Shown here: positions 19,991 through 57,655 of the stretch, one piece after another
How positions within the stretch are numbered: position 1 is the first letter of the stretch
How the letters are laid out: every line of letters begins with the position of its first letter
IMG/VR virus record: IMGVR_UViG_3300023184_000026
Coordinates: 233,259-297,258 of that record
DNA length: 64,000 nucleotides
Reading direction: 5' to 3' (one strand)
Program-made: the position numbers and the translations under genes
The notes under the pieces: generated by a model
What the model was told of the DNA's origin: nothing
Seen by the model: the letters and a program-made list of their open reading frames with translations, nothing else
Database searches by the model: none

Positions 19991-19994
19991 GTCA

Positions 19995-22154: not shown

Positions 22155-22256
22155 TATGGCACCAAACCGACCAACCCACTCTATCCAACACGGAATCCGC
22201 TAAATTATTATCCTTACTAATATAACGTATCCTTTATTTTTGAAGCTATATTTGTG

Positions 22257-22264
22257 TATTTATA
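22257..22264 (+). promoter_or_regulatory. TATTTATA putative late-promoter motif
   Basis: 13 nt before ATG 22278. Confidence 0.55.
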
Positions 22265-22277
22265 TATACTTATAGGC

Positions 22278-26198: not shown

Positions 26199-26255
26199 TA
26201 ATATTCTTGTCCAATTATTGTGCGAGTTTCCGCATATATATGTAAAAGGTTATAT

Positions 26256-26897
26256 ATGAAACACGCAAAAAATACATCAAACATAGATATAGTTCGCTCA
26301 TATTTGAATAATGAGCGACCATTTTTACAAGTCGGATATACCGGAGATCATGACAAATATATAATCCGTAAAGAGGGAGAAAAATGGTCCGATTCGAGCG
26401 GCAAGCAGTGGATACAAACTGCGACCGGCCCACGCTCTGTTACGCGAGTAATGGATATAATACGAGATGAGGTTGATGATAAATGCTCTTGCTGTGGAAG
26501 AGAAATACGATGGGGTACGAAGCAAGACAGAAAGATGTTTCATAAAACCAAAAAATGTCTTGATTGTGTTTCCGAAGAAGAAACATCTCTTAGAATAAAA
26601 GGACAATTCAAATTGTATGAAACTAAAAAAATGATTGAGAACGAAATTTCATATTTAGCCGACATTAAACAAAAACTACGAGAAAGTAAGGATTATCTCG
26701 AAAGCGATGATTCAAAAATTCTCACGTGGGCAAACCAAACCGGCATGGTGGAGGAATGGAGCAATGAAGCGAGAGGAGAATTGAAAGAACGTATTCAAAA
26801 AGATTGGTCCACTTGCCTTAAAAAAATAAAAACTGCCGAAAAAGAATTGAAAAAAGTGAACGAAAAAATAAATGAAATTTTAAAAGAAAAAAATTGA
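26256..26897 (+). CDS. Hypothetical protein with two CxxC pairs and C-terminal coiled coil
   Basis: KCSCCG...KKCLDC; start placed at ATG 26256 (MKHAK) rather than the GTG at 26220. Confidence 0.6.
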   Translation: MKHAKNTSNIDIVRSYLNNERPFLQVGYTGDHDKYIIRKEGEKWSDSSGKQWIQTATGPRSVTRVMDIIRDEVDDKCSCCGREIRWGTKQDRKMFHKTKKCLDCVSEEETSLRIKGQFKLYETKKMIENEISYLADIKQKLRESKDYLESDDSKILTWANQTGMVEEWSNEARGELKERIQKDWSTCLKKIKTAEKELKKVNEKINEILKEKN

Positions 26898-26927
26898 CAT
26901 AATAAATAAATATCTCAATATACGGTT

Positions 26928-28862
26928 ATGAAGATTCTTTATATAGCACCTCACCTTTCAACCGGTGGATGTCCCCAGTTCTTGCTCAAGAAAATACAAG
27001 TTTTACACAAAGATCATGAAATTTATTGTGTTGAATACTCAAATCATGGCGGCTTTACTGTTCAAAGAAACCAAATAAAGGAGATTCTTGGAAACAGATT
27101 CATAGAACTTGGTGAAGATAAAATGAATCTTCCGAATATCATAGACCGAATAAATCCGGAAATTGTTCATTTGGAAGAAATGCCAGAATATTTCATGGAT
27201 GGCAATTTGGCAGTAAAATTGTATGACAAAAACAGAAAATATAAAATAATTGAAACATCCCACGACAGCAGTTTCGACGCAAGAAATAAAACATTTTTCC
27301 CTGATAAGATACTGTTCGTAAGCAAGTATCAACTTGAATCTTTGAAATCATTGGATGTAGCAATGGATGTGTGTGAATATCCAATAGTAATTAAGCCAAG
27401 AAAGCCTCGGGCGGAAGCGTTGAAGGTACTTGGACTTGACCCAAATAAGAAACATATTATAAATGTTGGATTATTTACTCCAAGAAAAAATCAAGCTGAG
27501 ATAATTAGGTATGCTAAGATGTTGAAGGACTATCCAGTCCAGTTTCATTTCATCGGCAATCAGGCGGATAATTTTAAGTTTTATTGGGAACCATTGATGA
27601 AAGATTTTCCGAGCAATTGTGTGTGGTGGAACGAACGTAAAGACGTTGAAAATTTTTACCAAATTGCGGATCTTTTTCTATTCACTTCGCGAGGAACCAT
27701 ACATGATAAAGAAACAAGTCCTCTTGTGATTAGAGAAGCTATATCGTTCAATGTTACGTCGTTAATATATAATCTACCAGTGTATCTTGGAATGTATGAC
27801 AAATATGAAAATATAAACTATCTCAATTTTGAAAGTATGCAAGACAACTGCTCAAAAATACTAAACTCTCTGAAAATTAAACCAAACAATATTATGCCAG
27901 AATTTATAGAAAAACAAGAAGATATCAAGATAGGATACGACCGTTCAGAAAACAAGATTGAATATCTGTCCAAACACGATATTCCAAATGCAATCGTGTC
28001 GGTAAAGGACATAGACTCAAAAACGGTGTTGTATGCAGCACAACATGAAATTTTGAACGCCAATATAAATTATTGGATTATTCCCGTACACAAGAGTCAT
28101 AGAGATTTTGAAACAGATATCCTTTTTGGTGGAATGACTGTTGATGTATATAGTGGAGAAAATTTATTACACTCCAAAGATTTCAGAATACGGGTCGTCA
28201 ATGTAGAAAAGCCAGTACTGAAAACAAAGAATAATATCACTCCAACATATAATAACTATATGGAGTTTTTTGTTCACGGTGAATACAATGAATATTTGAA
28301 AGGAAAAGAGTTTAACACCGTTGTTGATGTTGGTGCCAACGCCGGTATCTGGGTTGAATATATCAAGTATGTAGCCAAATGCAAAAAGATATATGCAATA
28401 GAACCAAACACACAAGCATTAAAAACATTGAGAGATACATATACATCGGATGAATTGACCATAATAGACAAAGCATTGTGTGATAAAGATGGTGAATTGG
28501 AGTTTTTCATAGATCCCAGCAATTCTACCATAGGATCAATCAAGAAAAATCATCAAGACAGTTTGGTTGTTTCTCACAAAATACAAGGAATTTCATTTCG
28601 CACTTTTATCAAGGAAAATAATATTGATCATATAGATTTGATGAAAATGGACATAGAAGGTGGCGAATATCCATTTTTTGATAGCATGCAGAAAGAAGAT
28701 CTGGATAAAATTGGAACAATATTGGTTGAATATCACATGCAAGGTGGTCAAACCATAGACAAAGAAGTTGCAATATTATTGGCATTGTTGCGCGGGTCTG
28801 GATTCAAATACACCATAAAACATCAACACTCTGGCGGTGGGTTTATAGTTGCAACCAAATAA
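26928..28862 (+). CDS. GT4-family glycosyltransferase fused to FkbM-family methyltransferase
   Basis: GT-B: LYIAPHLSTGG, NVGLFTPRKNQ, ETSPLVIREA; C-terminal VVDVGANAG, YAIEPN, LMKMDIEGGE. Confidence 0.85.
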   Translation: MKILYIAPHLSTGGCPQFLLKKIQVLHKDHEIYCVEYSNHGGFTVQRNQIKEILGNRFIELGEDKMNLPNIIDRINPEIVHLEEMPEYFMDGNLAVKLYDKNRKYKIIETSHDSSFDARNKTFFPDKILFVSKYQLESLKSLDVAMDVCEYPIVIKPRKPRAEALKVLGLDPNKKHIINVGLFTPRKNQAEIIRYAKMLKDYPVQFHFIGNQADNFKFYWEPLMKDFPSNCVWWNERKDVENFYQIADLFLFTSRGTIHDKETSPLVIREAISFNVTSLIYNLPVYLGMYDKYENINYLNFESMQDNCSKILNSLKIKPNNIMPEFIEKQEDIKIGYDRSENKIEYLSKHDIPNAIVSVKDIDSKTVLYAAQHEILNANINYWIIPVHKSHRDFETDILFGGMTVDVYSGENLLHSKDFRIRVVNVEKPVLKTKNNITPTYNNYMEFFVHGEYNEYLKGKEFNTVVDVGANAGIWVEYIKYVAKCKKIYAIEPNTQALKTLRDTYTSDELTIIDKALCDKDGELEFFIDPSNSTIGSIKKNHQDSLVVSHKIQGISFRTFIKENNIDHIDLMKMDIEGGEYPFFDSMQKEDLDKIGTILVEYHMQGGQTIDKEVAILLALLRGSGFKYTIKHQHSGGGFIVATK

Positions 28863-28868
28863 AATATT

Positions 28869-29498
28869 ATGGCAAACGGAGTATACAGAATAACAGAAGA
28901 GTTTGAGGAAAAATTGGCAAAATATACTGGTGCTCCATATGTAGTCACCGTGGATAATCAAAGCAATGCTTTGTTTTTATCATTATATTATCAAAATATA
29001 AAAGGACAGTCTATTAGCATTCCTTCCCGCACGTACCCGAGTGTACCATGTGAGATCATACATGCTGGCGGAAAGGTAAACTTTGAACCGGTTGAAGGCA
29101 AGACCATCAAGGGTGCATATCAGCTCAAGCCCACGCGCACGTGGGACAGCGCATTGCGCTTTACTGCCAACATGTATATTCCAAATTCGTTCATGTGCAT
29201 ATCTTTTACCGGTCCATATAAGCACTTCAAATTAAGCAAGGGTGGTGCTATTCTTACAGACGATCTTCATGCATATCATTGGTTTAAGCGTGCCAGATAC
29301 AGCGGCAGAAGAGAATGTTCATATCATGATGACAATCTGGATATGCTAGGTTGGAATTTTTACATGATGCCGGAACTTGCTGCCAGAGGATTGTTGCTTA
29401 TGGGTCAGTTTTATAACATGGACGGCACACCAAAACATAATGAAGATTTGGAGCTACCATATCCAGACTTATCCAAATTTGATGTGTATAAGCAATGA
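28869..29498 (+). CDS. Short DegT/DnrJ/EryC1/StrS-type PLP sugar aminotransferase
   Basis: FEEKLAKYTGAPYVVTV..NALFLSL, IPSRTYPSV, WDSA, SFTGPYKHFKLSKGGAILTDD, GWNFYM; only 209 aa. Confidence 0.75.
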   Translation: MANGVYRITEEFEEKLAKYTGAPYVVTVDNQSNALFLSLYYQNIKGQSISIPSRTYPSVPCEIIHAGGKVNFEPVEGKTIKGAYQLKPTRTWDSALRFTANMYIPNSFMCISFTGPYKHFKLSKGGAILTDDLHAYHWFKRARYSGRRECSYHDDNLDMLGWNFYMMPELAARGLLLMGQFYNMDGTPKHNEDLELPYPDLSKFDVYKQ

Positions 29499-30052
29499 TT
29501 AGAAAATTCCAAAACTATACAGAGGATGAAATGAATGAGTCTGGTATGACTTTTGGTAAAAATGTATATATTGCCAATGATGTTATCATTCATAATGCCC
29601 AGAATATAATCATAGGAGACAATGTTCGCATAGATACTCAATGTGTATTGATTGCTGGAAAAAATCACAAAATAAAAATTGGAAATAGCGTACATATTTC
29701 GGCAGGATGCTATTTTTATGGCAATTCCGGAAATATAACTCTGGGAGATTGTTGTTGCACTTCCGGTCGCTGCATTCTTTATACCGCAAATGATGATTAT
29801 ACAGACGGCTATATGGCCAATTCTGTGATAGATGATAAGTACAAAAAGGTGGTTGCTGGAAACATAGAGTTAAAAAAACATGCGTTGGTTGGATGTTATA
29901 CAGTAATACTTCCAAATGTTGTTTTGGAGCATGCCACGTCTGTAGGCGCACACTCGCTGATTACAAAATCTACTTCTCATTTTGATGTTGTGGCGGGTTG
30001 CCCAGCTAAATTTATAAAGAAAAGAAAAAATGTTTATTTGACAGATGTATAA
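29495..30052 (+). CDS. Hexapeptide-repeat (left-handed beta-helix) acetyltransferase
   Basis: FGKNVYI, IGDNVRI, IGNSVHI, LGDCCC repeats; VGAHSLI..DVVAGCPAKFIKKR C-terminus. Confidence 0.85.
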   Translation: MIRKFQNYTEDEMNESGMTFGKNVYIANDVIIHNAQNIIIGDNVRIDTQCVLIAGKNHKIKIGNSVHISAGCYFYGNSGNITLGDCCCTSGRCILYTANDDYTDGYMANSVIDDKYKKVVAGNIELKKHALVGCYTVILPNVVLEHATSVGAHSLITKSTSHFDVVAGCPAKFIKKRKNVYLTDV

Positions 30053-30845
30053 AGGAAAAAAAGTCATACTTACTACGACAGCGTGCAAAAGAATAAATCT
30101 TCTTAAAGCCGCAATACAAAGTTTTAGTATATTCTGCCAAGATAAGAATATAATAGATGAAATACACTATTATGACGACTCTTCGCAGCCACACGAAAGA
30201 TCAACGGCGATTGAGTATTATCATAAGCATATACCAAGTGCCAATTTGATATTCAGATTTTTTGAGAAGGAGACATTTCCAGACAACTATAGACATGCGA
30301 GAGTATTGAACTTCTGGAGAAATGGTATAGAAAGTTCAAATGCCGATTATGTATTTCATCTGGAAGATGATCATCAGTTTTATAATATGTTTAATATAGG
30401 TGAAGCTATAGATATTATGGAACAATATCCAGAGTATGCTTATATGGGCTATTGTCAAAGTTGGAAAAATTTTCCAGTTGATATGATGCCAAAGAAAATA
30501 ATAGGGAACTTTTGGGAGACGATTTATCTTGACAACAGGCCAATGAATGATTTATTATTCTTGGATGATGTTATGGCTATGCATACTGGACTAGATTGGT
30601 GGATGTATTATATTAATTGGCCGTATTTTTCTTTGCGGCCTGGAGTACATCATGTCAAGAAGCTGCTTTCCGTGGGAGATTTTTCCACAACATATGATCG
30701 TGAAAAAACAAGCGTTGAGTTGGAGTTTGCCATACGATGGAAAAATATGGGGTACAAAAGCATGATGTGCAAGTATTTTACTTCTCTACACACTGGTCAA
30801 GATCCAGAACTTAGCGCATACAAAATCAACAACTCAGCAAGATGA
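30045..30845 (+). CDS. GT-A fold glycosyltransferase (GT2-like)
   Basis: ILTTTACKR, HYYDDSS and YVFHLEDD (DXD-like) motifs; inside the glycosylation island. Confidence 0.65.
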   Translation: MYKGKKVILTTTACKRINLLKAAIQSFSIFCQDKNIIDEIHYYDDSSQPHERSTAIEYYHKHIPSANLIFRFFEKETFPDNYRHARVLNFWRNGIESSNADYVFHLEDDHQFYNMFNIGEAIDIMEQYPEYAYMGYCQSWKNFPVDMMPKKIIGNFWETIYLDNRPMNDLLFLDDVMAMHTGLDWWMYYINWPYFSLRPGVHHVKKLLSVGDFSTTYDREKTSVELEFAIRWKNMGYKSMMCKYFTSLHTGQDPELSAYKINNSAR

Positions 30846-32149
30846 ACGAACAAACATTTCAAAATATATGGACAGAATGCCTTGGGTTCAATATTGAACA
30901 AAAGCCAGAAGAATATAAACAGCTGCTTTCACTGCTTGATGATAGAAAGAACAAGCGTTATGCTCTTGAAATAGGCTCAAATTATGGCGGAACCACTGCT
31001 GGATTTTGTCAGTTATTTGATACGGTAATAACAATAGACATCAAACACCATATCAATTTTGATAGACTTAAACGGAAGCATCCCACATACCAATATATTA
31101 TTTCGGATTCCAAGAGCAATGATACATTGGAATATATCAAAAGTCTTGGAATTAAATTTGATTTCATCTTTATTGATGGCGACCATTCATACAATGGGGC
31201 AAAAAATGATTATGACAAATATAAGCAATTTTTGGCATATGATGGGCATATAGGATTTCATGACATCATCTCAAGCGACCTTAATCGCCAATACGACATA
31301 AATGTGGACATTCTTTGGAAAGAAATAAAAGACACATATAACGATGTTCACGAATTTGTGGCTACATCAAAACACTCTGATTATAGCAGGCAGAATGAAT
31401 TTCATGAAATAGTTGGAAAAAACGATTATTCACAATGGGGAGGTATTGGAGTATTAAAAAATACACCAATTGGAGTTTTTTCTCATAACTATCTTACCAA
31501 TCATTGGTATGACATTGTTAATAGCCAGCTTTTAAAACTGAGCAATTCTGGTCTATACAAGCGAGCGGACAAAATTGTTTATGGAGTCAATGTTGATAAG
31601 GATGACGTATATCATAGTTTTATTGGGCTGTTGGACAAATATGATATAGACAGAAAGATAGAAGTATATCGTTATACAAAAAACATGTATGAGTTTCCCA
31701 CACTTATTCATCTACAGAATTATTGTGCCAACAATCCAAATGCATCCGTAGTGTATTATCACGCAAAAGGAACATCTCGCTCGTATGATCGCAACATAGA
31801 GTCTTGGAGAGAATGTCTTGAATATTTTAACATAGAACAATGGAAAAAATGTCACACTGAAATTATTACAGGAAAACACGATGTGTGTGGAGCATTGCAT
31901 GTTGATAAATTTGAGTTTTTGGATAAAGTACTTACAAACTATTATTCTGGCAATTTCTGGTGGGCAAGTGCAAAGTATATAAATACACTTGACAATATAA
32001 CCGCAAAAATGATAGAAGTAAATATGGAAAGAGCCGAAGCTGAAAGATGGATAGGTAGAAAACCACATCGCTGGGCCAGCCTATATAATGAAAATATATC
32101 GGATTGGTATATGCATTACTTTGATCCAAAATTATATAAACGACCATGA
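30842..32149 (+). CDS. Class I SAM methyltransferase fused to a putative glycosyltransferase-like domain
   Basis: ALEIGSNYGG, FDFIFIDGDHSY, IGFHD (Methyltransf_24-like); C-terminal VVYYHAKG...WRECLEYF...YSGNFWWA domain. Confidence 0.7.
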   Translation: MNEQTFQNIWTECLGFNIEQKPEEYKQLLSLLDDRKNKRYALEIGSNYGGTTAGFCQLFDTVITIDIKHHINFDRLKRKHPTYQYIISDSKSNDTLEYIKSLGIKFDFIFIDGDHSYNGAKNDYDKYKQFLAYDGHIGFHDIISSDLNRQYDINVDILWKEIKDTYNDVHEFVATSKHSDYSRQNEFHEIVGKNDYSQWGGIGVLKNTPIGVFSHNYLTNHWYDIVNSQLLKLSNSGLYKRADKIVYGVNVDKDDVYHSFIGLLDKYDIDRKIEVYRYTKNMYEFPTLIHLQNYCANNPNASVVYYHAKGTSRSYDRNIESWRECLEYFNIEQWKKCHTEIITGKHDVCGALHVDKFEFLDKVLTNYYSGNFWWASAKYINTLDNITAKMIEVNMERAEAERWIGRKPHRWASLYNENISDWYMHYFDPKLYKRP

Positions 32150-33909
32150 AACTATCCGTCATAATCACATCATATAAGTTTAAAGATTTCATTTCACAAT
32201 GTATTGATAGTATATTGTCACAAAAAACCGACTTTGGATTTGAAGTGTTGATCAGAGATGACGGCACAAATGATGGTACATTTGAATTGTTAAATGAGAA
32301 ATACAAAGCAAATACCAATATCAGAATATTGGACTCTTCCACGAATGTGGGTGCAGTCGAAAATCTTCTTATATTGGTCAATGAAGCCAAGGGTAAATAT
32401 ATCGCACATATAGATGGCGACGATTATCTCACAGACGATGGATATTATCAGCGTTCTATTAATTATTTGGATGAAAATCCATCATATGCCTTATACTGCT
32501 CCGGTTGTAGATATCTTGAAAATGGAGTTGTGTCGCCCGAAAACCATTGGATAGTGAGTGCCAAACCAGATATTGAGTTAAAAGATTTACTTGTTGAAAA
32601 CTATGTGTCATTTGCGCGAGTATTTAAAAAAACAGAATTTAGAAGAGAGATATTCAAAGACATTATATATCCCGACTGGGTTTTTAACTTTGAAATATTA
32701 AAATACGGTAAAGGTTATTGTGATACCAATCATTGTGCAGGAATGTATAGAATACATAAAAATGGAATGTTTTCTATGACGCCAGCCGAAGAAAAGTTGG
32801 AAAATAAAAATATTATTAAATCGGAGTTGAAAAAAAGATATGCAAGATTTCAACACAAGGTTATTACCATAGTTGATAGTTTTGTATACAACGACTCAAT
32901 TCGGTCCAAATTATTGAATACAATAAATTGGATGAAAGAAGATGGTCACGAAGTATTGCTTGTATCCAATACCATGGTAGACAAGGAGATTTTAAAATAT
33001 GTAAAGTTTTATTTGTATGATAGTCGCAATCAACTATTTCAAGAAAAGTATGACGATGTTGGTCTTGTAGATTTTTGGAAATCTCTCGCTGATGGATTTT
33101 ATATACACGACGTTGTTCCAGTATTACAAAAGCACGGACTGTCTGTGATGATAAATCTTTTTAATGCATTATTATACGCAAAGTCGCAAGGATATACACA
33201 TTTTCAAAGATTTGAAGTTGATGATCTATTTGGAGAAAAATCGAGAGAATATATAAAGCAGGTTCCATATGTGTGCGCAAATGAAAATAAACACGGGTTG
33301 TTCTATTACAACGAAGGTAATAATCCACCGGATATGTCGTTTCATTATTTTTATTGCAACATAGATGAATTTTTATCCAAAGTTCCGAGATTATCCAACG
33401 AGCAAGATTATGTGAATTATCTAAGACAATATCACGATGACAATAAGTTCCGTATAGTTGAGGTTTATGTATATGAAAGTTTAAAAAGAAATAATGACTC
33501 AAAGTTTTTAATAAAGTTTGATGAAAATGCCATGACATTGGACTTTCCAGACACACGTTGGAATACAGAAACATCTATCAGCAGTTTTGATCCCAAATAC
33601 GGAAAGTGTACTACTCGACTTTATTATATCAACGAACACAATAAAGAAACTAATACATTCAATCGCGGATCATCGTATGCCGTTTACACGCACTCATATC
33701 ACTCCGGATCTACGTTTAGAAAAATAGTTGTAGAAAAGATTGATGGTGGAAAATACGAATTTATTCACAATACAGAAGTAGCGAATGGCTGGGCGTGGAA
33801 TGAAGTTTTTTCGGATGTTAAATCCATTTCTGTATATGAAGATGATAAGTTTTTATATAGAGAGCATGTTGCGGATTGTATATCATATATCAATCTAATA
33901 AGAAAATGA
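32146..33909 (+). CDS. GT2-family glycosyltransferase with unknown C-terminal domain
   Basis: LSVIITSY..FISQCIDSILSQ..EVLIRDDGTND..YIAHIDGDD. Confidence 0.85.
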   Translation: MKLSVIITSYKFKDFISQCIDSILSQKTDFGFEVLIRDDGTNDGTFELLNEKYKANTNIRILDSSTNVGAVENLLILVNEAKGKYIAHIDGDDYLTDDGYYQRSINYLDENPSYALYCSGCRYLENGVVSPENHWIVSAKPDIELKDLLVENYVSFARVFKKTEFRREIFKDIIYPDWVFNFEILKYGKGYCDTNHCAGMYRIHKNGMFSMTPAEEKLENKNIIKSELKKRYARFQHKVITIVDSFVYNDSIRSKLLNTINWMKEDGHEVLLVSNTMVDKEILKYVKFYLYDSRNQLFQEKYDDVGLVDFWKSLADGFYIHDVVPVLQKHGLSVMINLFNALLYAKSQGYTHFQRFEVDDLFGEKSREYIKQVPYVCANENKHGLFYYNEGNNPPDMSFHYFYCNIDEFLSKVPRLSNEQDYVNYLRQYHDDNKFRIVEVYVYESLKRNNDSKFLIKFDENAMTLDFPDTRWNTETSISSFDPKYGKCTTRLYYINEHNKETNTFNRGSSYAVYTHSYHSGSTFRKIVVEKIDGGKYEFIHNTEVANGWAWNEVFSDVKSISVYEDDKFLYREHVADCISYINLIRK

Positions 33910-34004
33910 TAAGTTTTTGATTGAAATTGGGTCAAATAAGTTTCATCATGATAAATTAGAAATATTTGCAGATTCAAATAAAAGTTTTATAAAATTAAAA
34001 TAAT

Positions 34005-36125
34005 ATGAAAGTAATTAATGTAAATCCTGGCATACTTCCTATTCCACCAAATGGTTGGGGCGCTGTTGAAAAGATAATTTGGGACTATCACCAAGAAATT
34101 TTAAAAGTTGGCATTCGCAGCGAAATCAAATATCTCGATGATATAAAATATGACGAAAGTATGGTTGTTCATGTGCACGTCGCCAATTTGGCAATTATAT
34201 GCCATGAGCGCGGCATTCCTTATATTTTTAGTATTCATGATCATCATGCATATTTGTATGGTAAAGATTCCGATGTATTTAGAAAAAATTTACAAGCAAT
34301 TGAAAACAGCGTATTTTCATTGTCGCCTTGCAAATATCTTATTCCATATTTTGGAAGCAAGAAGCTTCGTTACTTCAGTCACGCTGTTAACACGGATATA
34401 TTTAAGTTCAATGGTCATCAGAGACGACATGTGCCAAGACTGTTGTGTGTTGCAAATAACGGATATGCATATGATCAAAGCATAGACCGAAAAGGTTTCA
34501 AAATAGCTATTGAGTCGGCAATGAAACTAGCGTTGCCTATTACTATAGCCGGACCCAGCAACAACAAGAATTTTTTTAAAACAATGTCTCCGGAAATTAA
34601 CGGATATACAGGTCTCACAAAGTTATTCGACCTTGATGAAAAATGGCTTGTTGATCTTTATAACGAAAATGATATATTCCTCCATTTTTCGGAATTAGAA
34701 GCCGGACATCCAAACCTAACACTGCTTGAGGCAATGTCATGCGGTTTGCCGGTTGTTGGTACGTTCGAAGAGGTATTGTATAAAGGAATGTATGTGACTG
34801 ATAGAAATCTTGATAATGCAGTCGCCGGAATAAAAACTGTCGTGGGTAGTTTTGACCAATATCGACAGGATGCTTTAAATACTGCAAATTCCAATTCATA
34901 TGGAATCAGAGTAAATGAACTTGCAAAATTGTATAGTGAATATCGCGAACAGATATTTGCCAATGGAATAATAAATCATTATCAAACTTCTCAACAAACA
35001 CTAAAAGAACCAAAAAATAAAATAAATATATCGTTTTTGCGTGGACCAAAAGTAGAAATACTTGGACCAGTCAATAAAAAATATAAAGTCAAGTTTTATG
35101 ATATGGATACAAATAGTGTCATATACGAAACGACACTCAGAAATAATATGTGGTCCGTTTCAAATAAAAGATATTTTGTAAAATGGAAAATTGAAGTTTA
35201 TGAAGTTGTGAATGAAAATTGGGAAATGCTTATTGAAACCCGCGTTTTGGATTTAGCTAAAAAGTCGATAAAAGTGGTATTTGATACCAATAGCTTGGGA
35301 GATATTATTTCATATATTGGCACAACCGATGCCTTCCAGAAAAAACACAATTGCGAACTTACGTGTGTTGTTTTTAATACGGAACTAGTTGAATTATTCA
35401 GCAAAAATTACAAAAATATAAAGTTCTCAAGAACAAACGACGGCGATGACAATTATTACTCCACGTATTATATTGGTTATTATGATCAAGAAAATTGGGA
35501 CGGTAATATGAAAAAAAATCCAAAGCATTTATCACTTGCGTTGGTGGCGGCAAATATACTGGGATTGCCAGAGGTGGAAATTCCACCATCTTTGAATATA
35601 ACCCCTTTGAAGCATAATAAAAAATATGTATGTATTGCAACACAAAGCACTACACAGGCAAAATATTGGAACAATCCAAATGGCTGGAACCTTGTTGTGG
35701 ATTATATCAAATCCAAAGGATATGAAGTGTGGTGCATAGATTTACACAACAGTTTTGGGTCTGGTGGTAAAATGAATTATATGCCAGCGGGTGCCATCGA
35801 TAAGACTGGAAAATTCCCGTTGGAAGAAAGAATGTCTCAGGTTGCAGGTGCGGAGTTTTTTATTGGACTTGGATCTGGATTATCTTGGCTGGCATGGGGA
35901 GTTCATCAAAAAGTTATACTTATCAGTGGATTTAGCGAGGAGTTTGCCGAATTCAAAAATCCTTATAGAGTTATCAATAAAAACGTGTGTCATGGATGTT
36001 GGAATGATGCAAGTTGTATATTTGACAAATCCGATTGGAACTGGTGCCCCAGAAATAAAGATTTTGAATGTACTAAAGAGATATATCCAGAGGATGTTAT
36101 AAAAATGATAGACAAAATAATTTGA
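34005..36125 (+). CDS. GT4 glycosyltransferase fused to a TibC/Aah-like (BAHT) protein O-heptosyltransferase
   Basis: N-terminal IPPNGWGAVE..EAGHPNLTLLEAMSCGLPVV (GT4); from ~35020 GPKVEI..YFVKWKI, SLGDI..FQKKHNC, YVCIATQST..KYWNNPNGW, FIGLGSGLSWLAW, ISGFS, CHGCWND..WCP..ECTK. Confidence 0.82.
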   Translation: MKVINVNPGILPIPPNGWGAVEKIIWDYHQEILKVGIRSEIKYLDDIKYDESMVVHVHVANLAIICHERGIPYIFSIHDHHAYLYGKDSDVFRKNLQAIENSVFSLSPCKYLIPYFGSKKLRYFSHAVNTDIFKFNGHQRRHVPRLLCVANNGYAYDQSIDRKGFKIAIESAMKLALPITIAGPSNNKNFFKTMSPEINGYTGLTKLFDLDEKWLVDLYNENDIFLHFSELEAGHPNLTLLEAMSCGLPVVGTFEEVLYKGMYVTDRNLDNAVAGIKTVVGSFDQYRQDALNTANSNSYGIRVNELAKLYSEYREQIFANGIINHYQTSQQTLKEPKNKINISFLRGPKVEILGPVNKKYKVKFYDMDTNSVIYETTLRNNMWSVSNKRYFVKWKIEVYEVVNENWEMLIETRVLDLAKKSIKVVFDTNSLGDIISYIGTTDAFQKKHNCELTCVVFNTELVELFSKNYKNIKFSRTNDGDDNYYSTYYIGYYDQENWDGNMKKNPKHLSLALVAANILGLPEVEIPPSLNITPLKHNKKYVCIATQSTTQAKYWNNPNGWNLVVDYIKSKGYEVWCIDLHNSFGSGGKMNYMPAGAIDKTGKFPLEERMSQVAGAEFFIGLGSGLSWLAWGVHQKVILISGFSEEFAEFKNPYRVINKNVCHGCWNDASCIFDKSDWNWCPRNKDFECTKEIYPEDVIKMIDKII

Positions 36126-36144
36126 TACGCAATATATATAGGAT

Positions 36145-36531
36145 ATGGAATTGCAGCAGTTTATACCGTCAGATCAAATTATTTTAGCTATTGCCGAAAA
36201 AGTTAAAAAAAAATTTCCGTCCTCAAATGGCAAGTGTGAATTTATGTCGCAAGAACTGGTTTCTGATTTGAATAAAAAAGGAATACGATCCAATCATGTA
36301 ATGGGAATATTCACACTTGATGAACCCGGTGCATGGAAATACAGATCAGAAGAGGATGAAGAATTTGATGAGTATCAAGTTAATCATGATTGGGTAAATG
36401 TGGAAGGAAAAATATTAGACATATCCGCCGATCAATTTAAAAAGTACGTAAATCAAAATATACCAAATGTAGTATATATAAGATACTCAGATCCATTATA
36501 TAAATATTACACGGAGATGGGTTATGTCTGA
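36145..36531 (+). CDS. Small transglutaminase/papain-like fold protein
   Basis: Candidate triad GKCEF (C 36235), NHDWV (H 36385), ILDIS (D 36418). Confidence 0.5.
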   Translation: MELQQFIPSDQIILAIAEKVKKKFPSSNGKCEFMSQELVSDLNKKGIRSNHVMGIFTLDEPGAWKYRSEEDEEFDEYQVNHDWVNVEGKILDISADQFKKYVNQNIPNVVYIRYSDPLYKYYTEMGYV

Positions 36532-48852: not shown

Positions 48853-48906
48853 GTCAAAATATTTTGATGTTTGAGATTTATGATTGATATATATAGATAT
48901 AATTCT

Positions 48907-49659: not shown

Positions 49660-49684
49660 CCGTATATATAATATATATTGTACC

Positions 49685-53324: not shown

Positions 53325-54641
53325 ATGGCATGGCGTGGACCAACAGTTAAACCGATACTAAATAGACCACCGAACAAAGTAAGTTCTGGTCCAGAAATGT
53401 CGGACAAGAAACAGGAAGTTTCATCAATTTCCGGACCACCTATATTTGGTCCAGAAGCAAATCGTGGCAGAGAACATAATATTCGAAGAGACACTGATGA
53501 TAGAAAAGATTTTGCCATCAAACTCATAGATATTGATGCGGCCATACTTGGTCATATGGACAATGTTATAAGTCCAACGATAGTAGATTCTGGCAGACAG
53601 ATAAAAGTTCCTATAAATTATGCTTCTCCGGAACGCTGGAAAGCTATTCGCAAAGATGGCTCACTTCGCGACAAAAATGGAAAAGTACAAACTCCTGCTA
53701 TTGCATTTCGTCGCAGCACTGTGCAAAGAAACGACAATTTGATAACATTAAATCGCTATCTTCAATATCCAGTGATGAGAAAGTTCAGCGAAAAAAATAA
53801 ATATGACAAATTTTCAGTAATGAACGGATTTGCGCCACGAAAAGAAATTTATAGTGTGGCAATGCCAGATCATGTGATAATAAATTACGAATTTATCATC
53901 TGGACAGAATTGGTTGAACAATGCAACTCAGTCATAGAAGCAATAAATTTTGCTACTGAAGATTACTGGGGAGATAAAAATAGATTTAAATTCAGAACAA
54001 GCATCAGCGATTATAATTTTGAAACAACAAATGATGCTGGTCAAGACAGAATTGTCAAAGCTACTTTTGGTTTAATATGCAATGCATATCTACTTCCGGA
54101 AAAATTTGAGAATTATAAATCTACTACACAAAAAGCATTTACACCAAGAAAAGTTGTATTTGATGTTCATGAAAAGATTATGAATGGAACAGCCGAAAGA
54201 GCCGTCGGTGCAGCTGTTTCTATTAATGATGGTAATACAATTCCGGCTGTGATATCACCAACCATAACTTATAATATTATAAATCAAAACAGTACATTGG
54301 AAGTATTGAATATTGTTGGTGGAGGAGATGGTGGAGCTACTGGATCATTCACCGCAAACTCTGTAACAATTTCTGGTTCTGCTGATATAGATTCTCAATT
54401 GATTGGTGATGGAAATGCAGCAAGATGGTTGGTTTCTATTTCTAATGGATCTGACATCAAAGTTAATGAAGTTATGTCAAGTTGGAACAATGTGTCTTCC
54501 AGTTTTTATGTAACAGAAGTAAGTCAAATTGGATATGTGCCAGTATCATTATCTGTAAATAATGTGGGTGGTAGCATACACTTGTTGGCCACTCCTTTAT
54601 CTGGAACATGGACACTTAAATATATAAAGATGGTTGTATGA
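53325..54641 (+). CDS. gp15: Tail completion/sheath stabiliser (gp15-like) with C-terminal beta-rich extension
   Basis: IKVPINYASPERW..TPAIAFRR..INYEFIIWT..QCNSVIEAI; extension from ~54230. Confidence 0.6.
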   Translation: MAWRGPTVKPILNRPPNKVSSGPEMSDKKQEVSSISGPPIFGPEANRGREHNIRRDTDDRKDFAIKLIDIDAAILGHMDNVISPTIVDSGRQIKVPINYASPERWKAIRKDGSLRDKNGKVQTPAIAFRRSTVQRNDNLITLNRYLQYPVMRKFSEKNKYDKFSVMNGFAPRKEIYSVAMPDHVIINYEFIIWTELVEQCNSVIEAINFATEDYWGDKNRFKFRTSISDYNFETTNDAGQDRIVKATFGLICNAYLLPEKFENYKSTTQKAFTPRKVVFDVHEKIMNGTAERAVGAAVSINDGNTIPAVISPTITYNIINQNSTLEVLNIVGGGDGGATGSFTANSVTISGSADIDSQLIGDGNAARWLVSISNGSDIKVNEVMSSWNNVSSSFYVTEVSQIGYVPVSLSVNNVGGSIHLLATPLSGTWTLKYIKMVV

Positions 54642-57600
54642 TTCAAAACGCATTTATAGCTTCAAATGGCTTGATTGTAAATGGAAATGCCGAAATTAAC
54701 GGAGATTTGACCGTGAGCGGCTTTGCATATGCTTCATCAAGTTATGCTATCACAGCATCATATGCACTAAATTTTTCAGGAACTAGCGGCATAAATGGTA
54801 CTGATGGAACTTCCGGAACGAGCGGTCAAAATGGTACAAGTGGTACAGGTGGAAATTCTGGCACAGATGGCACGTCCGGATCAAGTGGAGAATCTGGCAC
54901 CAGTGGAACAAACGGCTTGTCGGGAACAAGTGGTACGAGTGGAGAAAGTGGTACCAGTGGAACAACTGGCACAAGCGGAACGAGTGGAGCGACTGGCTCA
55001 TCTGGTCAATCTGGTAGCGATGGTACCAGTGGTACAAGTGGTACGAGTGGGGTAAGCGGGGCGACTGGTTCTTCTGGCACGAGTGGTACTGATGGCACGA
55101 GCGGCTCTTCTGGTTCTACAGGAATAAGTGGCACAAGCGGAACGAGCGGAGCGACTGGCTCATCTGGTCAATCTGGTAGCGATGGTACCAGTGGTACGAG
55201 TGGTACAAACGGTGCCAGTGGCACGAGCGGAATAAATGGTACATCCGGTTCTTCCGGAACAAGCGGAACGAGTGGAGAAACAGGTACAAGTGGTACAAGT
55301 GGCGCTACTGGTTCTTCTGGCACGAGTGGCACGGATGGCATTAGCGGTACAACGGGTGCAAGTGGCACATCAGGTTCAAGTGGCACCAGCGGTGCAACAG
55401 GCTCAAGTGGCACAAGCGGTGCAACTGGCGCATCAGGTTCAAGTGGCACAAGCGGTGCAACTGGCGCATCAGGTTCAAGTGGCACAAGCGGTGCAACTGG
55501 CGCATCAGGTTCAAGTGGCACCAGCGGTGTAACGGGTGCAAGTGGCACATCGGGTTCAAGTGGCACCAGCGGTGCAACTGGCGCATCAGGTTCAAGTGGC
55601 ACCAGCGGCACATCAGGTTCAAGTGGCACCAGCGGCACATCAGGCTCAAGTGGCACCAGCGGTGCAACTGGCGCATCAGGTTCAAGTGGCACCAGCGGTG
55701 TAACGGGTGCAAGTGGCACATCAGGTTCAAGTGGCACCAGCGGCACATCAGGTTCAAGTGGCACCAGCGGTGCATCGGGTTCAAGTGGCACCAGCGGCAC
55801 ATCAGGTTCAAGTGGCACCAGCGGTGCGGGAACCATTTCTGGCGGCACAGCAAATTATGTTGCAAGATTTACTGGCGCAACAACACTAACTACTGGTTCA
55901 ATATTTGACAATGCAACAAATGTGGGAATTGGAAAAGCAACGCCAAACGCAAATCTTGATGTATATGGTGATACAATAATTACAGGTAGTTTATCAGTGA
56001 CTGGTAACATTACTAATATAGGTAATGTCAGTGCAAACAGCATAACGGTTGCTGGGCAACCAACAACTTATGGTACAGTAAATCCTGATTATATTAACGC
56101 AGGTAGAATAACTTCCGACCAAACCGGTGCAGGTTCAGGTAGTGATATTATATTTAATTATGCACCTGTAAGTAGTGGTATATCTCTTAACACATCAACG
56201 GGTGTATTCACATTAACCGCAGGTAAAACATACAGTTTATTTGCAGAATTAAGTTTCAGCAATTTTAGTGATACAGCAAATGGTTATGAAATATACGATT
56301 GGGTAGATGCAACAACAAATACTAGATTAGTCACAACTGGTATAGGTGCTGGTATAGGTGAGAATATCAATAGAAATACAAATGAATTTAATGCAACATC
56401 TACTACTTTAATTTATACCCCAACTACAAACCAAACTGTAAAAGTTCGTATTGTAGAGGCGGCGGGAACAGTAACTGTCAGAGCAGGTATTGGAACAAAA
56501 GCAATTATTCAACAAATAAATCCCGTCATAGCGGTTCAAGCAACTGCTACTGGTACGGTTAGCACGAACTATGCAAAATACACAAGGTCTGCACAACAAA
56601 CTGGGTTATCAAATGGATCGGTTGTTGTTTGCAATGTAATAGAAAATACAGGTGGATCAGCAATATCAGTCAATACAGGAAGTGGTCAAGTTACATTGGC
56701 CGCTGGTAAAACTTATAGATTAAAAGGAATGATTCCCGGTTTCACTACTAGCGGTGCGAACGTAAGACCACAGTTCTGTTGGTATAATGAAACTACATTA
56801 ACATATATAGGTTCGTCTGCCGAATCGTACAGTCCGAGCGATGCTGTTGGATACGGAGCATTTGGCGGCGCAGCTGAAGCAATTATTACCACAGCTGCAA
56901 CAACCGTGACATCGTTTAGATTATTAGCAGGTGCGACCAATTTAGCAGGTATAGGCGGTAATACCGATTTTTCTACTACAGGAAGTTATCCGTGGATTGA
57001 CATACAAGAAATAGGAGCAACCTTCGCACTCAACGCACTTGACACAATGACTCTAACCGGCGCTGTTTCAGCCAGCGGTAATGTAACCGGACAAAACTTA
57101 ATATCATCAAACGCAAGTGGTAATGAAGGTGGAGAAATACAACTTGCTAAATCTCCAAATAGTACCTTATCTGGAAGTAATGTTGTCATTGATCAATACA
57201 TTGATAGAATTAGATTTTTTGAAAGCGGCGGTAGCTCAAGAGGTGCATATATTGATCTATCAACAGCACCGGCGGGGGTAGGTTTTTTAATTAATAATAG
57301 AGCAAGTGGCATTGTTGATGCCGGTACAGACGTTACATTAGGAAATTTGAAAGTAAGATTATCAACATCGGGAAATAGAAGTTTGCAAGTATCAACTGTT
57401 TCAGGAACATATTCAGTTTATGGCAGTAGTGTATATAGTACGGGAGGTCCAGGCGGTACATCAATAACAGACAATGCGCCATTAACAATTACAACCACGC
57501 CCACATATATTAATGCGGCATATAGTTTTGGTCTGGGAGGATATACTGATACTTGGTTGCTTATGTCCACGGCCAGTAACATTGCTTGGAGAATAACATT

Positions 57601-57655
57601 GATAGTTGGTAGTAGTTACAACAACAATATGATATGTATTGAAAGATTGGTATAA
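54638..57655 (+). CDS. Fibre protein with a proline-free Gly-X-Y collagen-like stalk and Thr/Gly-rich head domains
   Basis: SASYA-type leader, ~116 G-X-Y triplets, then two related beta domains (VFTLTAGKTYSL / QVTLAAGKTYRL). Confidence 0.8.
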   Translation: MIQNAFIASNGLIVNGNAEINGDLTVSGFAYASSSYAITASYALNFSGTSGINGTDGTSGTSGQNGTSGTGGNSGTDGTSGSSGESGTSGTNGLSGTSGTSGESGTSGTTGTSGTSGATGSSGQSGSDGTSGTSGTSGVSGATGSSGTSGTDGTSGSSGSTGISGTSGTSGATGSSGQSGSDGTSGTSGTNGASGTSGINGTSGSSGTSGTSGETGTSGTSGATGSSGTSGTDGISGTTGASGTSGSSGTSGATGSSGTSGATGASGSSGTSGATGASGSSGTSGATGASGSSGTSGVTGASGTSGSSGTSGATGASGSSGTSGTSGSSGTSGTSGSSGTSGATGASGSSGTSGVTGASGTSGSSGTSGTSGSSGTSGASGSSGTSGTSGSSGTSGAGTISGGTANYVARFTGATTLTTGSIFDNATNVGIGKATPNANLDVYGDTIITGSLSVTGNITNIGNVSANSITVAGQPTTYGTVNPDYINAGRITSDQTGAGSGSDIIFNYAPVSSGISLNTSTGVFTLTAGKTYSLFAELSFSNFSDTANGYEIYDWVDATTNTRLVTTGIGAGIGENINRNTNEFNATSTTLIYTPTTNQTVKVRIVEAAGTVTVRAGIGTKAIIQQINPVIAVQATATGTVSTNYAKYTRSAQQTGLSNGSVVVCNVIENTGGSAISVNTGSGQVTLAAGKTYRLKGMIPGFTTSGANVRPQFCWYNETTLTYIGSSAESYSPSDAVGYGAFGGAAEAIITTAATTVTSFRLLAGATNLAGIGGNTDFSTTGSYPWIDIQEIGATFALNALDTMTLTGAVSASGNVTGQNLISSNASGNEGGEIQLAKSPNSTLSGSNVVIDQYIDRIRFFESGGSSRGAYIDLSTAPAGVGFLINNRASGIVDAGTDVTLGNLKVRLSTSGNRSLQVSTVSGTYSVYGSSVYSTGGPGGTSITDNAPLTITTTPTYINAAYSFGLGGYTDTWLLMSTASNIAWRITLIVGSSYNNNMICIERLV
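54779..55825 (+). repeat. Coding 9-nt-period repeat (GTS/GSS/GAT/GAS) with 27- and 36-bp higher-order units
   Basis: 1044 nt between the first Gly (54779) and Gly 55823; near-identical TCAGGTTCAAGTGGCAC(C/A)AGCGG units from ~55370 to 55825. Confidence 0.95.

What the first reader, a model, noticed from the sequence alone, without database searches (positions are those of the whole stretch)
35020..36125. Phage-encoded TibC/Aah-type protein O-heptosyltransferase fused to a GT4
Seen: the N-terminal beta segment, the LGD motif, the IGLGSGLSWLAW motif and four C-terminal Cys (35988, 35997, 36045, 36069) in CHGCWND..WCP..EC. Established: TibC/Aah are iron-containing dodecameric enzymes that hyper-heptosylate Ser-rich repeats of bacterial autotransporter adhesins, with the Fe bound by four such Cys. 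Inference: the strongest sign that the island targets proteins. The GT4 partner could extend the first sugar, and the nearby Ser/Thr-rich fibres are the obvious substrates.
Basis: partly seen in the sequence, partly recalled or inferred. Interest (0 to 1): 0.8.

Follow-up and report, generated by a model that had tools for sequence, protein, structure and literature searches.

The report
Phage TibC-like protein glycosyltransferase fused to GT4
A lake-water T4-like phage carries a well-preserved relative of the bacterial enzymes that coat adhesins with heptose, fused to a second sugar transferase; it belongs to a large, unstudied virus-only branch of that family, and probably glycosylates phage particle proteins, though the target and the sugar are not shown.

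Summary
ORF 34005-36125 (+, 706 aa) has an N-terminal GT4-type domain (aa 1-334) and a C-terminal TibC/Aah domain (aa 335-706). The C-terminal domain scores 352.9 bits on TIGR04414 (cut-off 200) and E 1e-74 against TibC structures. The predicted fold matches TibC (TM 0.86), and no WaaC-type LPS heptosyltransferase is among the 50 best fold matches.

New here:
- The domain falls in a virus-only sister clade (SH-aLRT 100). At least 593 IMG/VR loci carry a relative, and the best bacterial genome match is 41% identical.
- The GT4 and TibC-like parts form a conserved module: fused in 47 ORFs and encoded as adjacent genes in 10 loci.
- The gene lies in an accessory island of soluble sugar enzymes inside the late structural module.
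- The hydrophobic thumb tip that TibC needs to form its dodecamer is not kept.
- A few related phage islands carry heptose-pathway genes; this window has none.

Protein O-glycosylation with an ADP-sugar is the best reading but rests on homology and context. That the Ser/Thr-rich fibres are the substrates is untested. The enzyme is a new variant of a known kind. Databases already label such proteins automatically, but I found no study of them.

The parts
34005..36125 (+). Complete ORF, 706 aa: bifunctional GT4 + TibC-like glycosyltransferase, predicted soluble
   Evidence: AlphaFold2 model with pLDDT 89. The highest Kyte-Doolittle 19-residue mean is 1.42, so no membrane segment is expected.
34005..35006 (+). 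GT4-type (retaining GT-B) domain, aa 1-334, ending in a long linker helix (aa 299-328)
   Evidence: Pfam Glycos_transf_1 at 27.2 bits. Foldseek matches to MshA, BshA and PimA at E 1e-11 to 1e-9. The same GT4 is a separate gene just upstream of stand-alone TibC-like genes in 10 viral loci, at 38-48% identity (8 full-length at 45-48%).
35019..35282 (+). N-terminal beta-barrel of the TibC-like domain (aa 339-426)
   Evidence: Pfam TibC_1st at 27.9 bits. Strands E339-426 in the model. TibC residues 1-97 form this barrel.
35301..35303 (+). D433, equivalent of the TibC catalytic base D110 (LGD motif)
   Evidence: Alignment; the paper. Invariant in 51/51 viral and 50/50 bacterial sequences.
35649..35663 (+). 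T549 and K553, equivalents of T226 and K230 (beta-phosphate contacts)
35751..35780 (+). Beta-hairpin 'thumb' (aa 583-592). The tip is G588-K589 where TibC has F265-V266
   Evidence: Strands E583-586 and E589-592. Tip residues. In TibC, the F265D and V266D mutants are dimers and inactive.
35829..35888 (+). R609 (= R286, adenine contact), G623 (= P300, heptose C6 stereoselectivity site) and W628 (= W305, sugar O4 contact)
35988..36071 (+). Cys4 'iron-finger' region: C662, C665, C681, C689, plus F687 (= F368)
   Evidence: Cys in 49/51 viral and 50/50 bacterial sequences at each position. Metal binding was not tested.
26928..33909 (+). Rest of the accessory sugar island: GT4+FkbM methyltransferase (26928-28862), truncated DegT-like aminotransferase (28869-29498), hexapeptide acetyltransferase (29495-30052), GT-A-like protein (30045-30845), CmcI/Methyltransf_24 methyltransferase + DUF8361 (30842-32149), GT2 + unknown C-terminal part (32146-33909)
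   Evidence: DUF8361 is inferred from the homologue in L001. All are predicted soluble. The island is absent from the syntenic Flavobacterium phage immuto.
19994..20002 (+). ATATTTATA motif, a candidate late promoter. It is the only copy upstream of the block 20025-38179 that contains the island and the terminase gene
   Evidence: 13 hits against 2.66 expected. Nine of them lie on the + strand; eight sit just upstream of + strand genes and one (51214) inside an annotated ORF start. No convincing + strand terminator lies inside the block. That it acts as a promoter is inferred.
57792..60155 (+). Candidate acceptor (untested): tailspike with a pectate-lyase-like right-handed beta-helix (aa 401-603)
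   Evidence: Pfam PF12708 at 57.5 bits. PHROG tail spike families.
54638..57655 (+). Candidate acceptor (untested): collagen-like tail fibre, about 390 aa of G-X-Y repeats rich in Ser and Thr
   Evidence: Pfam Collagen at 160.8 bits. Composition S 18%, T 16%, G 20%.

Best explanation
The ORF encodes a soluble two-domain glycosyltransferase made by a freshwater T4-like phage.

Shown:
- The C-terminal domain is a structurally complete homologue of TibC/Aah, with beta-barrel, GT-B core, thumb hairpin and Cys4 finger.
- Its catalytic Asp and all named ADP-heptose contacts except the stereoselectivity site are kept.
- It belongs to a virus-only sister clade of the bacterial autotransporter heptosyltransferases.
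- It is coupled to one particular GT4, either by fusion or by adjacency.
- It sits in an accessory island of soluble sugar enzymes inside the late structural gene module.

Inferred mechanism: late in infection, in the host cytoplasm where virions assemble, the TibC-like domain transfers a first sugar from an ADP-activated donor onto Ser/Thr of folded, beta-structured phage particle proteins. The donor is most likely host ADP-heptose. The acceptors are probably tailspike or fibre proteins, or the tail sheath in related phages. The fused GT4 and the other island transferases (GT2, GT-A-like, GT4+FkbM) then extend the glycan, and the methyltransferases and the acetyltransferase decorate it. The result would be a glycan coat on exposed virion parts. 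The oligomer is probably not the TibC-type dodecamer.
For: - Family and fold.
- Conserved residues: D433, T549, K553, R609, W628, C662, C665, C681, C689 and F687.
- Known family members act in the cytoplasm on folded or partly folded beta-helices. They recognise a structural motif, not a sequence, and use ADP-heptose from the LPS pathway.
- Virus-only clade at SH-aLRT 100. The best bacterial genome match is 41% identical, and at least 593 IMG/VR loci carry a relative.
- GT4/TibC fusion-fission pair.
- Gene order: the TibC-like gene lies upstream of the tail sheath gene, often directly, in 26 of 82 viral loci, and near the terminase (33 loci) and portal (30 loci) genes.
- The island is missing in the syntenic immuto phage.
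- All seven island proteins lack membrane segments, and there is no flippase, polymerase or lipid-carrier transferase.
- Heptose-pathway genes in related islands: an rfaE_dom_I-like kinase and a split transketolase in L100/L104, and an HldD-like epimerase (38-50% identical to the E. coli enzyme) with a GT9 domain in L121.
- A beta-helix tailspike and other fibre proteins are encoded in the window.
- Contigs from lake metatranscriptome libraries cover the gene.
Against: - No acceptor was identified. Fibre homologues lie within 10 kb in only 5 of 82 loci, which is uninformative because the fibres are about 18 kb away.
- There is no autotransporter, the only known substrate class of the family.
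- The window has no heptose-pathway gene, and the host and its ADP-heptose supply are unknown.
- The adenine-contact Arg is lost in 17 of 51 viral-clade sequences, although it is kept here. Donor use may therefore vary in the clade.
- The thumb tip is not hydrophobic, so the dodecamer-dependent mechanism of TibC may not apply.
- Fusions to methyltransferase and SDR domains would also fit a pathway that builds a free or carrier-bound glycan.
- The RNA-library coverage may be carried-over DNA.
Confidence: 0.5

Rival explanations
1. The module acts on a non-protein acceptor. The TibC-like domain has been re-used in phages to add a sugar to an oligosaccharide, a small molecule or a carrier-bound glycan, and the island builds a methylated, acetylated glycan that is not attached to virion proteins. 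One such product would be an altered host envelope glycan.
For: - In viral genomes the domain is usually fused to sugar-tailoring domains (FkbM methyltransferase, SDR, other GTs), as in polysaccharide or natural-product pathways.
- The island holds five GT domains plus methyl- and acetyltransferases.
- The thumb tip and, in a third of the clade, the adenine-contact Arg have diverged.
- No protein substrate was identified.
Against: - The parts that set TibC apart from LPS heptosyltransferases are all kept: the beta-barrel, the thumb hairpin and the Cys4 finger. In TibC the finger contributes to binding the protein substrate.
- The fold matches TibC (TM 0.86), and no WaaC-type enzyme is in the top 50.
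- The island has no membrane protein, flippase, polymerase, ligase or polyprenyl-phosphate transferase.
Confidence: 0.2
2. The enzyme glycosylates a host protein rather than a virion protein. The target could be a surface adhesin, an autotransporter or the phage receptor on its way to export. The effect would be to block superinfection or change the infected cell's surface.
For: All characterised family members modify bacterial surface proteins in the cytoplasm before export. Phage-encoded surface modification is a known strategy (mentioned in PMC12619734).
Against: - The virus-only clade is separate from all bacterial autotransporter-linked enzymes.
- The gene lies in the late structural module of a T4-like phage, not in an early or lysogeny-type region.
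- Modifying host surface proteins late in a lytic cycle brings little obvious gain (inference).
Confidence: 0.12
3. The module glycosylates phage DNA, for example hydroxymethylated cytosines, as other phage GT clusters do.
For: Phage GT clusters can add hexose, HexNAc, heptose or Kdo to 5hmC, and some lie near structural genes (Pyle et al. preprint).
Against: Those DNA enzymes are T4 beta-glucosyltransferase-like GT-B or GT-A proteins, not TibC-like. No cytosine methyltransferase, TET or hydroxymethylase gene was seen in the window's annotated ORFs. The TibC-specific protein-binding parts are conserved.
Confidence: 0.03

Closest known systems
TibC (ETEC H10407) and Aah (AIDA system): bacterial autotransporter heptosyltransferases (BAHT, TIGR04414; PDB 4RAP/4RB4)
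   Same: - Domain plan: beta-barrel, atypical GT-B core, beta-hairpin thumb and Cys4 finger.
- 36-41% identity; predicted fold TM 0.86.
- Catalytic Asp, Thr/Lys phosphate contacts, Arg adenine contact, Trp sugar contact and all four metal cysteines are kept.
- Soluble and cytoplasmic.
   Different: - Encoded by a lytic-type T4-like phage and fused to a GT4.
- Lies in a virus-only sister clade.
- No autotransporter gene next to it, whereas aah and the C. rodentium gene sit directly upstream of their AIDA-type substrates.
- Thumb tip is G-K instead of F-V, so the dodecamer contact is not kept.
- Gly at the P300/S294 stereoselectivity site.
- Sugar, metal and acceptor are untested.
Uncharacterised viral TibC-like proteins: Microcystis phage Mel-JY01 gene annotated 'methyltransferase FkbM' (1226 aa), huge-phage records LR756501/LR756503/LR756504, UniProt A0A6J5SVC1 'Glycosyltransferase Aah/TibC [uncultured Caudovirales phage]', and many IMG/VR and metagenome proteins
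   Same: Same virus-only clade and the same habit of fusing the domain to GT4, FkbM or SDR domains. Often placed near the sheath, terminase and portal genes.
   Different: Architectures vary: stand-alone genes, tandem TibC-like domains, proteins up to 1900 aa. None has been studied. The names come from automatic annotation only.
LPS heptosyltransferases WaaC/WaaF (GT9)
   Same: Distant GT9 relationship (Pfam Glyco_transf_9 at 22.7 bits) and an ADP-heptose type donor site.
   Different: NCBIfam heptosyltransferase I scores only 12.5 bits against a cut-off of 185. No such structure is among the 50 best fold matches. They lack the beta-barrel and the Cys4 finger, and they act on lipid A-Kdo, not on protein.
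Virion glycosylation in mycobacteriophages (Freeman et al. 2023, cited in PMC12619734)
   Same: The proposed outcome is the same: phage-encoded transferases put glycans on exposed virion proteins.
   Different: The enzyme family and host group differ. There the glycans were demonstrated on capsid and tail-tube C-termini; here nothing has been demonstrated. I could not read that paper.

Membership tests
BAHT / TibC-Aah family (TIGR04414) | Full-length match to the family model above its trusted cut-off | tested here: met
   352.9 bits against a cut-off of 200, profile positions 7-374 of 374. TibC structures at E 1e-74.
BAHT / TibC-Aah family (TIGR04414) | TibC protomer fold: N-terminal beta-barrel, GT-B core with a reduced N-lobe, beta-hairpin thumb and finger insertion | tested here: met
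   AlphaFold2 pLDDT 89. Foldseek against 4rap/4rb4 gives E 2e-30 and TM 0.84-0.86. Pfam TibC_1st at 27.9 bits.
BAHT / TibC-Aah family (TIGR04414) | Catalytic base Asp110 and the donor contacts Thr226, Lys230, Arg286 and Trp305 | tested here: met
   D433, T549, K553, R609 and W628.
BAHT / TibC-Aah family (TIGR04414) | Four cysteines of the 1Fe-0S finger | tested here: met
   C662, C665, C681 and C689 align with C339, C342, C358 and C370.
BAHT / TibC-Aah family (TIGR04414) | Iron actually bound and required for activity | not testable with these tools
   Needs metal analysis of purified protein. A Cys4 site could also hold zinc.
   G588 and K589 stand at these positions. The tip is hydrophilic across the viral clade. 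In TibC, F265D and V266D give inactive dimers.
BAHT / TibC-Aah family (TIGR04414) | Ring-shaped dodecamer | not testable with these tools
   No multimer prediction or experiment is available here. The thumb-tip result argues against the same interface.
BAHT / TibC-Aah family (TIGR04414) | Partner substrate is an AIDA-type autotransporter, often encoded next to the enzyme | tested here: not met
   aah and the C. rodentium gene lie directly upstream of AIDA-type genes. The window and 82 viral loci show phage genes instead, with no autotransporter.
BAHT / TibC-Aah family (TIGR04414) | Groups with the bacterial enzymes in a tree | tested here: not met
   The window sequence lies in a virus-only clade, separated from all 48 bacterial sequences in the tree (46 genome loci plus two plasmid genes) by a branch with SH-aLRT 100. 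Caveat: only the best 80 loci per collection were used.
BAHT / TibC-Aah family (TIGR04414) | Transfers heptose from ADP-heptose to Ser/Thr of a protein | not testable with these tools
   Only indirect evidence: conserved contacts and heptose-pathway genes in a few related islands, none in the window.
GT4 (retaining GT-B glycosyltransferases) | GT-B fold with a Glycos_transf_1 C-terminal lobe and an E-x7-E-like acidic motif | tested here: met
   Pfam PF00534 at 27.2 bits (cut-off 26.4). Foldseek matches to MshA, BshA and PimA at E 1e-11 to 1e-9. E230, E232 and E242 are invariant in 45 homologues, with slightly longer spacing than E-x7-E.
LPS heptosyltransferase (WaaC/WaaF, GT9) | Match to the heptosyltransferase I/II models, and a fold closest to WaaC | tested here: not met
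   TIGR02193 scores 12.5 bits against a cut-off of 185.3. No WaaC-type structure is in the top 50 fold matches.

The most novel reading that the evidence does not exclude
A large virus-only branch of the TibC/Aah family, always coupled to one GT4, is the initiating enzyme of a widespread system. With it, aquatic T4-like phages would coat their own tail proteins (spikes, fibres, sheath insertions) with heptose-based, methylated glycans in the host cytoplasm. This would be the first viral protein-heptosylation system. It would work without the dodecamer ring of the bacterial enzymes.
Probability: 0.3. Interest if true: 0.8.

Novelty: new variant of a known kind. Interest (0 to 1): 0.62.

Why it matters
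The text available to me describes demonstrated virion glycosylation only for mycobacteriophages. If this module does what its homology suggests, protein glycosylation of phage particles would be common in freshwater and marine T4-like phages. At least 593 IMG/VR loci carry a relative, and the family spans 1464 clusters at 50% identity, most of them multidomain.

That would bear on phage adsorption, particle stability and recognition by hosts and grazers. It would also show that the TibC fold is not tied to autotransporters or to a dodecamer. The soluble fused GT4-TibC enzymes could be useful for cytoplasmic glycoengineering.

The claim is directly testable with a handful of synthetic genes in a laboratory E. 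coli strain.

Tried and rejected
- **Tail sheath as the substrate by adjacency.** The TibC-like gene lies upstream of the sheath gene, often directly, in 26 of 82 viral loci. One lineage has a 1304-aa sheath with a Ser/Thr-rich insertion. In the window's own lineage the neighbours are other genes, and no sheath gene was detected among the window's proteins. I treat this as module synteny and at most a lead.
- **The 1314-aa protein (22254-26198) as a sheath or an ADP-heptose synthase.** It does not match the sheath. It carries a ligase-type KxDG motif, an HxGH nucleotidyltransferase/NMNAT-like region and an unknown C-terminal part. It is not part of the sugar system.
- **An acceptor motif.** [IVL][ST]GS[LIVAMF].[IVLF] occurs in the window only in the four fibre or spike proteins. 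It also occurs in structural proteins of the TibC-less immuto phage, so it is not specific.
- **Heptose-pathway genes in the window.** None was found with the E. coli GmhA, GmhB, HldE and HldD proteins as queries.
- **Near-identical DNA in the phage collection.** None.
- **tRNA genes as a host clue.** None. One homologue is filed under a Bacteroidota MAG on a 3.6-kb contig, which is too weak to name a host.
- **Literature on phage TibC-like enzymes or on Mel-JY01.** Nothing found. The Freeman 2023 paper is not held.
- **Sigma-70 promoter scan.** Not above chance.
- **Metatranscriptome contigs.** They cover the gene, but DNA carry-over cannot be excluded and strain differences confuse the upstream part.
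Full report
**1. The observation**

ORF 34005..36125 on the + strand is intact and encodes 706 aa.

- That domain matches NCBIfam TIGR04414 (hepto_Aah_TibC, an equivalog model) at 352.9 bits against a cut-off of 200, over nearly the whole profile.
- It matches the two TibC crystal structures at E 1e-74.
The LGD motif is at aa 431-433 and IGLGSGLSWLAW is at aa 620-631. The four cysteines are C662, C665, C681 and C689, with codons starting at nt 35988, 35997, 36045 and 36069.
- Using the residue roles from the TibC paper (PMC4358343), the alignment gives: D110 (catalytic base) = D433; T226 and K230 (beta-phosphate) = T549 and K553; R286 (adenine N1) = R609; W305 (heptose O4) = W628; C339, C342, C358 and C370 (ferric ion) = the four cysteines; F368 = F687.
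- Two positions differ. The stereoselectivity residue P300 (S294 in Aah) is G623. The thumb-tip pair F265/V266 is G588/K589.

The N-terminal half is a GT4. Pfam Glycos_transf_1 is only just above threshold (27.2 against 26.4 bits). An AlphaFold2 model built on 45 homologues (pLDDT 89) settles it. Foldseek against the PDB returns the TibC chains first (E 2e-30, TM 0.84-0.86 normalised to TibC). For the N-terminal half it returns retaining GT4 enzymes such as MshA, BshA and PimA (E 1e-11 to 1e-9). No WaaC-type LPS heptosyltransferase is among the 50 best matches.

**2. The setting**

The window is part of a distant T4-like phage.

- It encodes a T4-type large terminase (36524-38179), portal (38241-40202), prohead protease, major capsid protein, baseplate wedge proteins, a collagen-like fibre and a tailspike.
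- The terminase is 52% identical to that of Microcystis phage Mel-JY01 and 51% to Flavobacterium phage immuto.
- The DNA occurs in at least 16 lake and freshwater metagenome runs.
- The host is unknown. There are no tRNA genes, and only a weak Bacteroidota hint.

Upstream of the gene lies an island of sugar enzymes, 26928-33909:

- GT4 fused to an FkbM methyltransferase;
- a truncated DegT-type aminotransferase;
- a hexapeptide acetyltransferase;
- a GT-A-like protein;
- a CmcI/Methyltransf_24 methyltransferase;
- a GT2.

None of the seven island proteins has a membrane segment. There is no flippase, polymerase, ligase or lipid-carrier transferase. The syntenic immuto phage has the same flanking genes but no island, so the island is accessory. 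A related metagenome contig keeps most of the island in the same order.

A motif, ATATTTATA, is enriched (13 hits against 2.66 expected). Eight of its nine + strand copies sit 14-35 nt upstream of + strand genes, among them the portal and tailspike genes. The only copy before the island is at 19994, and no convincing terminator follows until past the terminase gene. This fits late co-transcription of the island with structural genes, but it is an inference. Contigs from four lake metatranscriptome libraries cover most of the GT4-TibC gene. DNA carry-over cannot be excluded.

**3. Relatives**

The word-indexed search found 3766 proteins at E <= 1e-5. Many share the 700-716 aa architecture. Others are fused to FkbM, SDR or further GT domains, or carry two TibC-like domains in tandem. 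The exhaustive search of 50%-identity representatives found 1464 clusters (748 at E <= 1e-30), mostly multidomain proteins of up to 1900 aa.

- In species-representative bacterial genomes the best matches are only 35-41% identical. They come from Burkholderia, Caballeronia and Paraburkholderia, from Victivallales/Lentisphaerota and from Negativicutes. They are stand-alone genes of about 400-450 aa.
- In IMG/VR at least 593 loci encode a relative, up to 98% identical.
- A maximum-likelihood tree of 101 domain sequences splits cleanly, with SH-aLRT 100. One side holds the 46 sequences from bacterial genome loci, the AIDA-linked aah gene, the C. rodentium gene and two IMG/VR contigs that look bacterial. 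The other side holds 48 IMG/VR sequences, Mel-JY01, the metagenome contig and the window.

Site by site, D110 and W305 are invariant on both sides, and K230, the four cysteines and F368 are nearly so. R286 is invariant in the bacterial clade but kept in only 34 of 51 viral sequences. The thumb tip is often hydrophobic in the bacterial clade (G-[FIL]-V-W in the TibC-like members) and hydrophilic in viruses.

The GT4 half is itself coupled to the TibC-like domain. The same GT4 is fused to it in 47 ORFs. In 10 loci it is a separate gene directly upstream of a stand-alone TibC-like gene, at 38-48% identity (8 full-length at 45-48%).

In 82 viral loci the gene lies near the terminase (33 loci) and portal (30 loci) genes, and upstream of the tail sheath gene, often directly, in 26.

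**4. The donor sugar**

All residues that the TibC paper names as ADP-heptose contacts are kept here except the stereoselectivity site. ADP-heptose is therefore the economical inference.

The window has no heptose-pathway gene, so the host would have to supply the donor. Some related viral islands do carry such genes:

- L100 and L104, the sister lineage of the window's group, have a Zn-dependent dehydrogenase, a split transketolase and a kinase downstream of the TibC fusion. The kinase's best match is the heptose-7-phosphate kinase domain of HldE (99.8 bits, below the model's cut-off of 345). Transketolase can make sedoheptulose-7-phosphate, which is established biochemistry.
- L121 has an epimerase 38-50% identical to E. 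coli HldD, next to a GT8-GT9 fusion.
- L124 carries a small cytidylyltransferase-type gene.

This supports heptose use somewhere in the clade. It does not prove it for this phage.

**5. The acceptor**

[quoted passage not shown] Phage particles assemble in the cytoplasm, so the enzymology fits.

The window encodes a tailspike with a pectate-lyase-type right-handed beta-helix (57792-60155). It also encodes a collagen-like fibre whose Ser/Thr richness is a G-X-Y repeat (54638-57655). The tailspike is the closer structural analogue of TibA. The collagen-like fibre has no precedent as a substrate of this family. I found no evidence that singles out either, and two leads (sheath adjacency and a fibre motif) did not hold up (see tried and rejected).

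**6. Judgement**

The dodecamer contact is contradicted at the sequence level.

The best explanation is cytoplasmic O-glycosylation of virion proteins, started by the TibC-like domain and extended by the fused GT4 and the rest of the island (confidence 0.5). The main rival is a non-protein acceptor (0.2).

Databases already label such phage proteins 'Aah/TibC' or 'autotransporter strand-loop-strand O-heptosyltransferase' by automatic annotation. I found no study of them. I rate it a new variant of a known kind, with interest 0.62.

Noticed in passing
window 22254-26198 (+): A 1314-aa protein, 74% identical to a 1306-aa protein in a related contig. It combines a ligase-type KxDG motif (weak RNA_ligase hit), an HxGH nucleotidyltransferase/NMNAT-like region (aa 370-555) and an unknown C-terminal family (phrog_19290). 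It may be an RNA-repair or NAD-related multi-enzyme. It has no PDB sequence match.
   Followed up: partly
window, + strand copies at 2618, 14186, 19994, 38207, 40229, 44275, 51214, 57770, 63108: The motif ATATTTATA is enriched (13 hits against 2.66 expected). Eight of its nine + strand copies sit 14-35 nt upstream of + strand genes, several of them structural. It is probably this phage's late promoter element; it is the reverse complement of the T4 late consensus TATAAATA extended by one base.
   Followed up: partly
window 28869-29498 (+): A DegT/PseC-type aminotransferase ORF of only 209 aa that matches just profile positions 25-97 of 360. It looks like a truncated remnant inside the sugar island.
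   Followed up: no
window 16784-19990 (+): A single 1068-aa polypeptide with an Mre11-type phosphoesterase domain at the N-terminus and a Rad50/SMC-type ATPase at the C-terminus. These are usually two genes in T4-like phages. The fusion is conserved in many related viral loci.
   Followed up: no
window 38241-40202 (+), about aa 470-540: The portal protein carries a long Gly/Asp/Glu-rich low-complexity stretch in its C-terminal part. This coincides with the high GC skew of the 38-40 kb bin.
   Followed up: no
window 10819-14181 (+): A 1120-aa protein with FG-GAP repeats (84 bits) and a dockerin-type motif, lying among baseplate and tail genes. It may be a calcium-binding adhesion module on the virion.
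   Followed up: no
window 48871-50479 (+): A GIY-YIG homing-type endonuclease (48871-49659) and a non-specific DNA/RNA endonuclease (49685-50479) sit directly after the major capsid gene and its terminator.
   Followed up: no
L107-L120 and L127, e.g. L108:11196-15110: A related phage lineage has a giant tail sheath protein of about 1304 aa, roughly twice the usual size. Its insertion at aa 120-560 is 25-29% Ser+Thr. The gene lies immediately downstream of the GT4-TibC gene.
   Followed up: partly
L100:11306-15036 and L104:9831-12823: Downstream of a TibC-FkbM-SDR fusion, a phage island encodes a Zn-dependent dehydrogenase, a split transketolase and an HldE-kinase-like protein. This may be a phage-encoded route to a heptose or higher sugar.
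   Followed up: partly
window 36145-36531 (+) and 26220-26897 (+): Two small conserved proteins of 128 and 225 aa always lie just before the large terminase gene in related loci (16 and 27 loci). One may be the small terminase. The 128-aa protein gives a weak papain-like-fold toxin hit (18 bits, below cut-off), which is probably chance.
   Followed up: no
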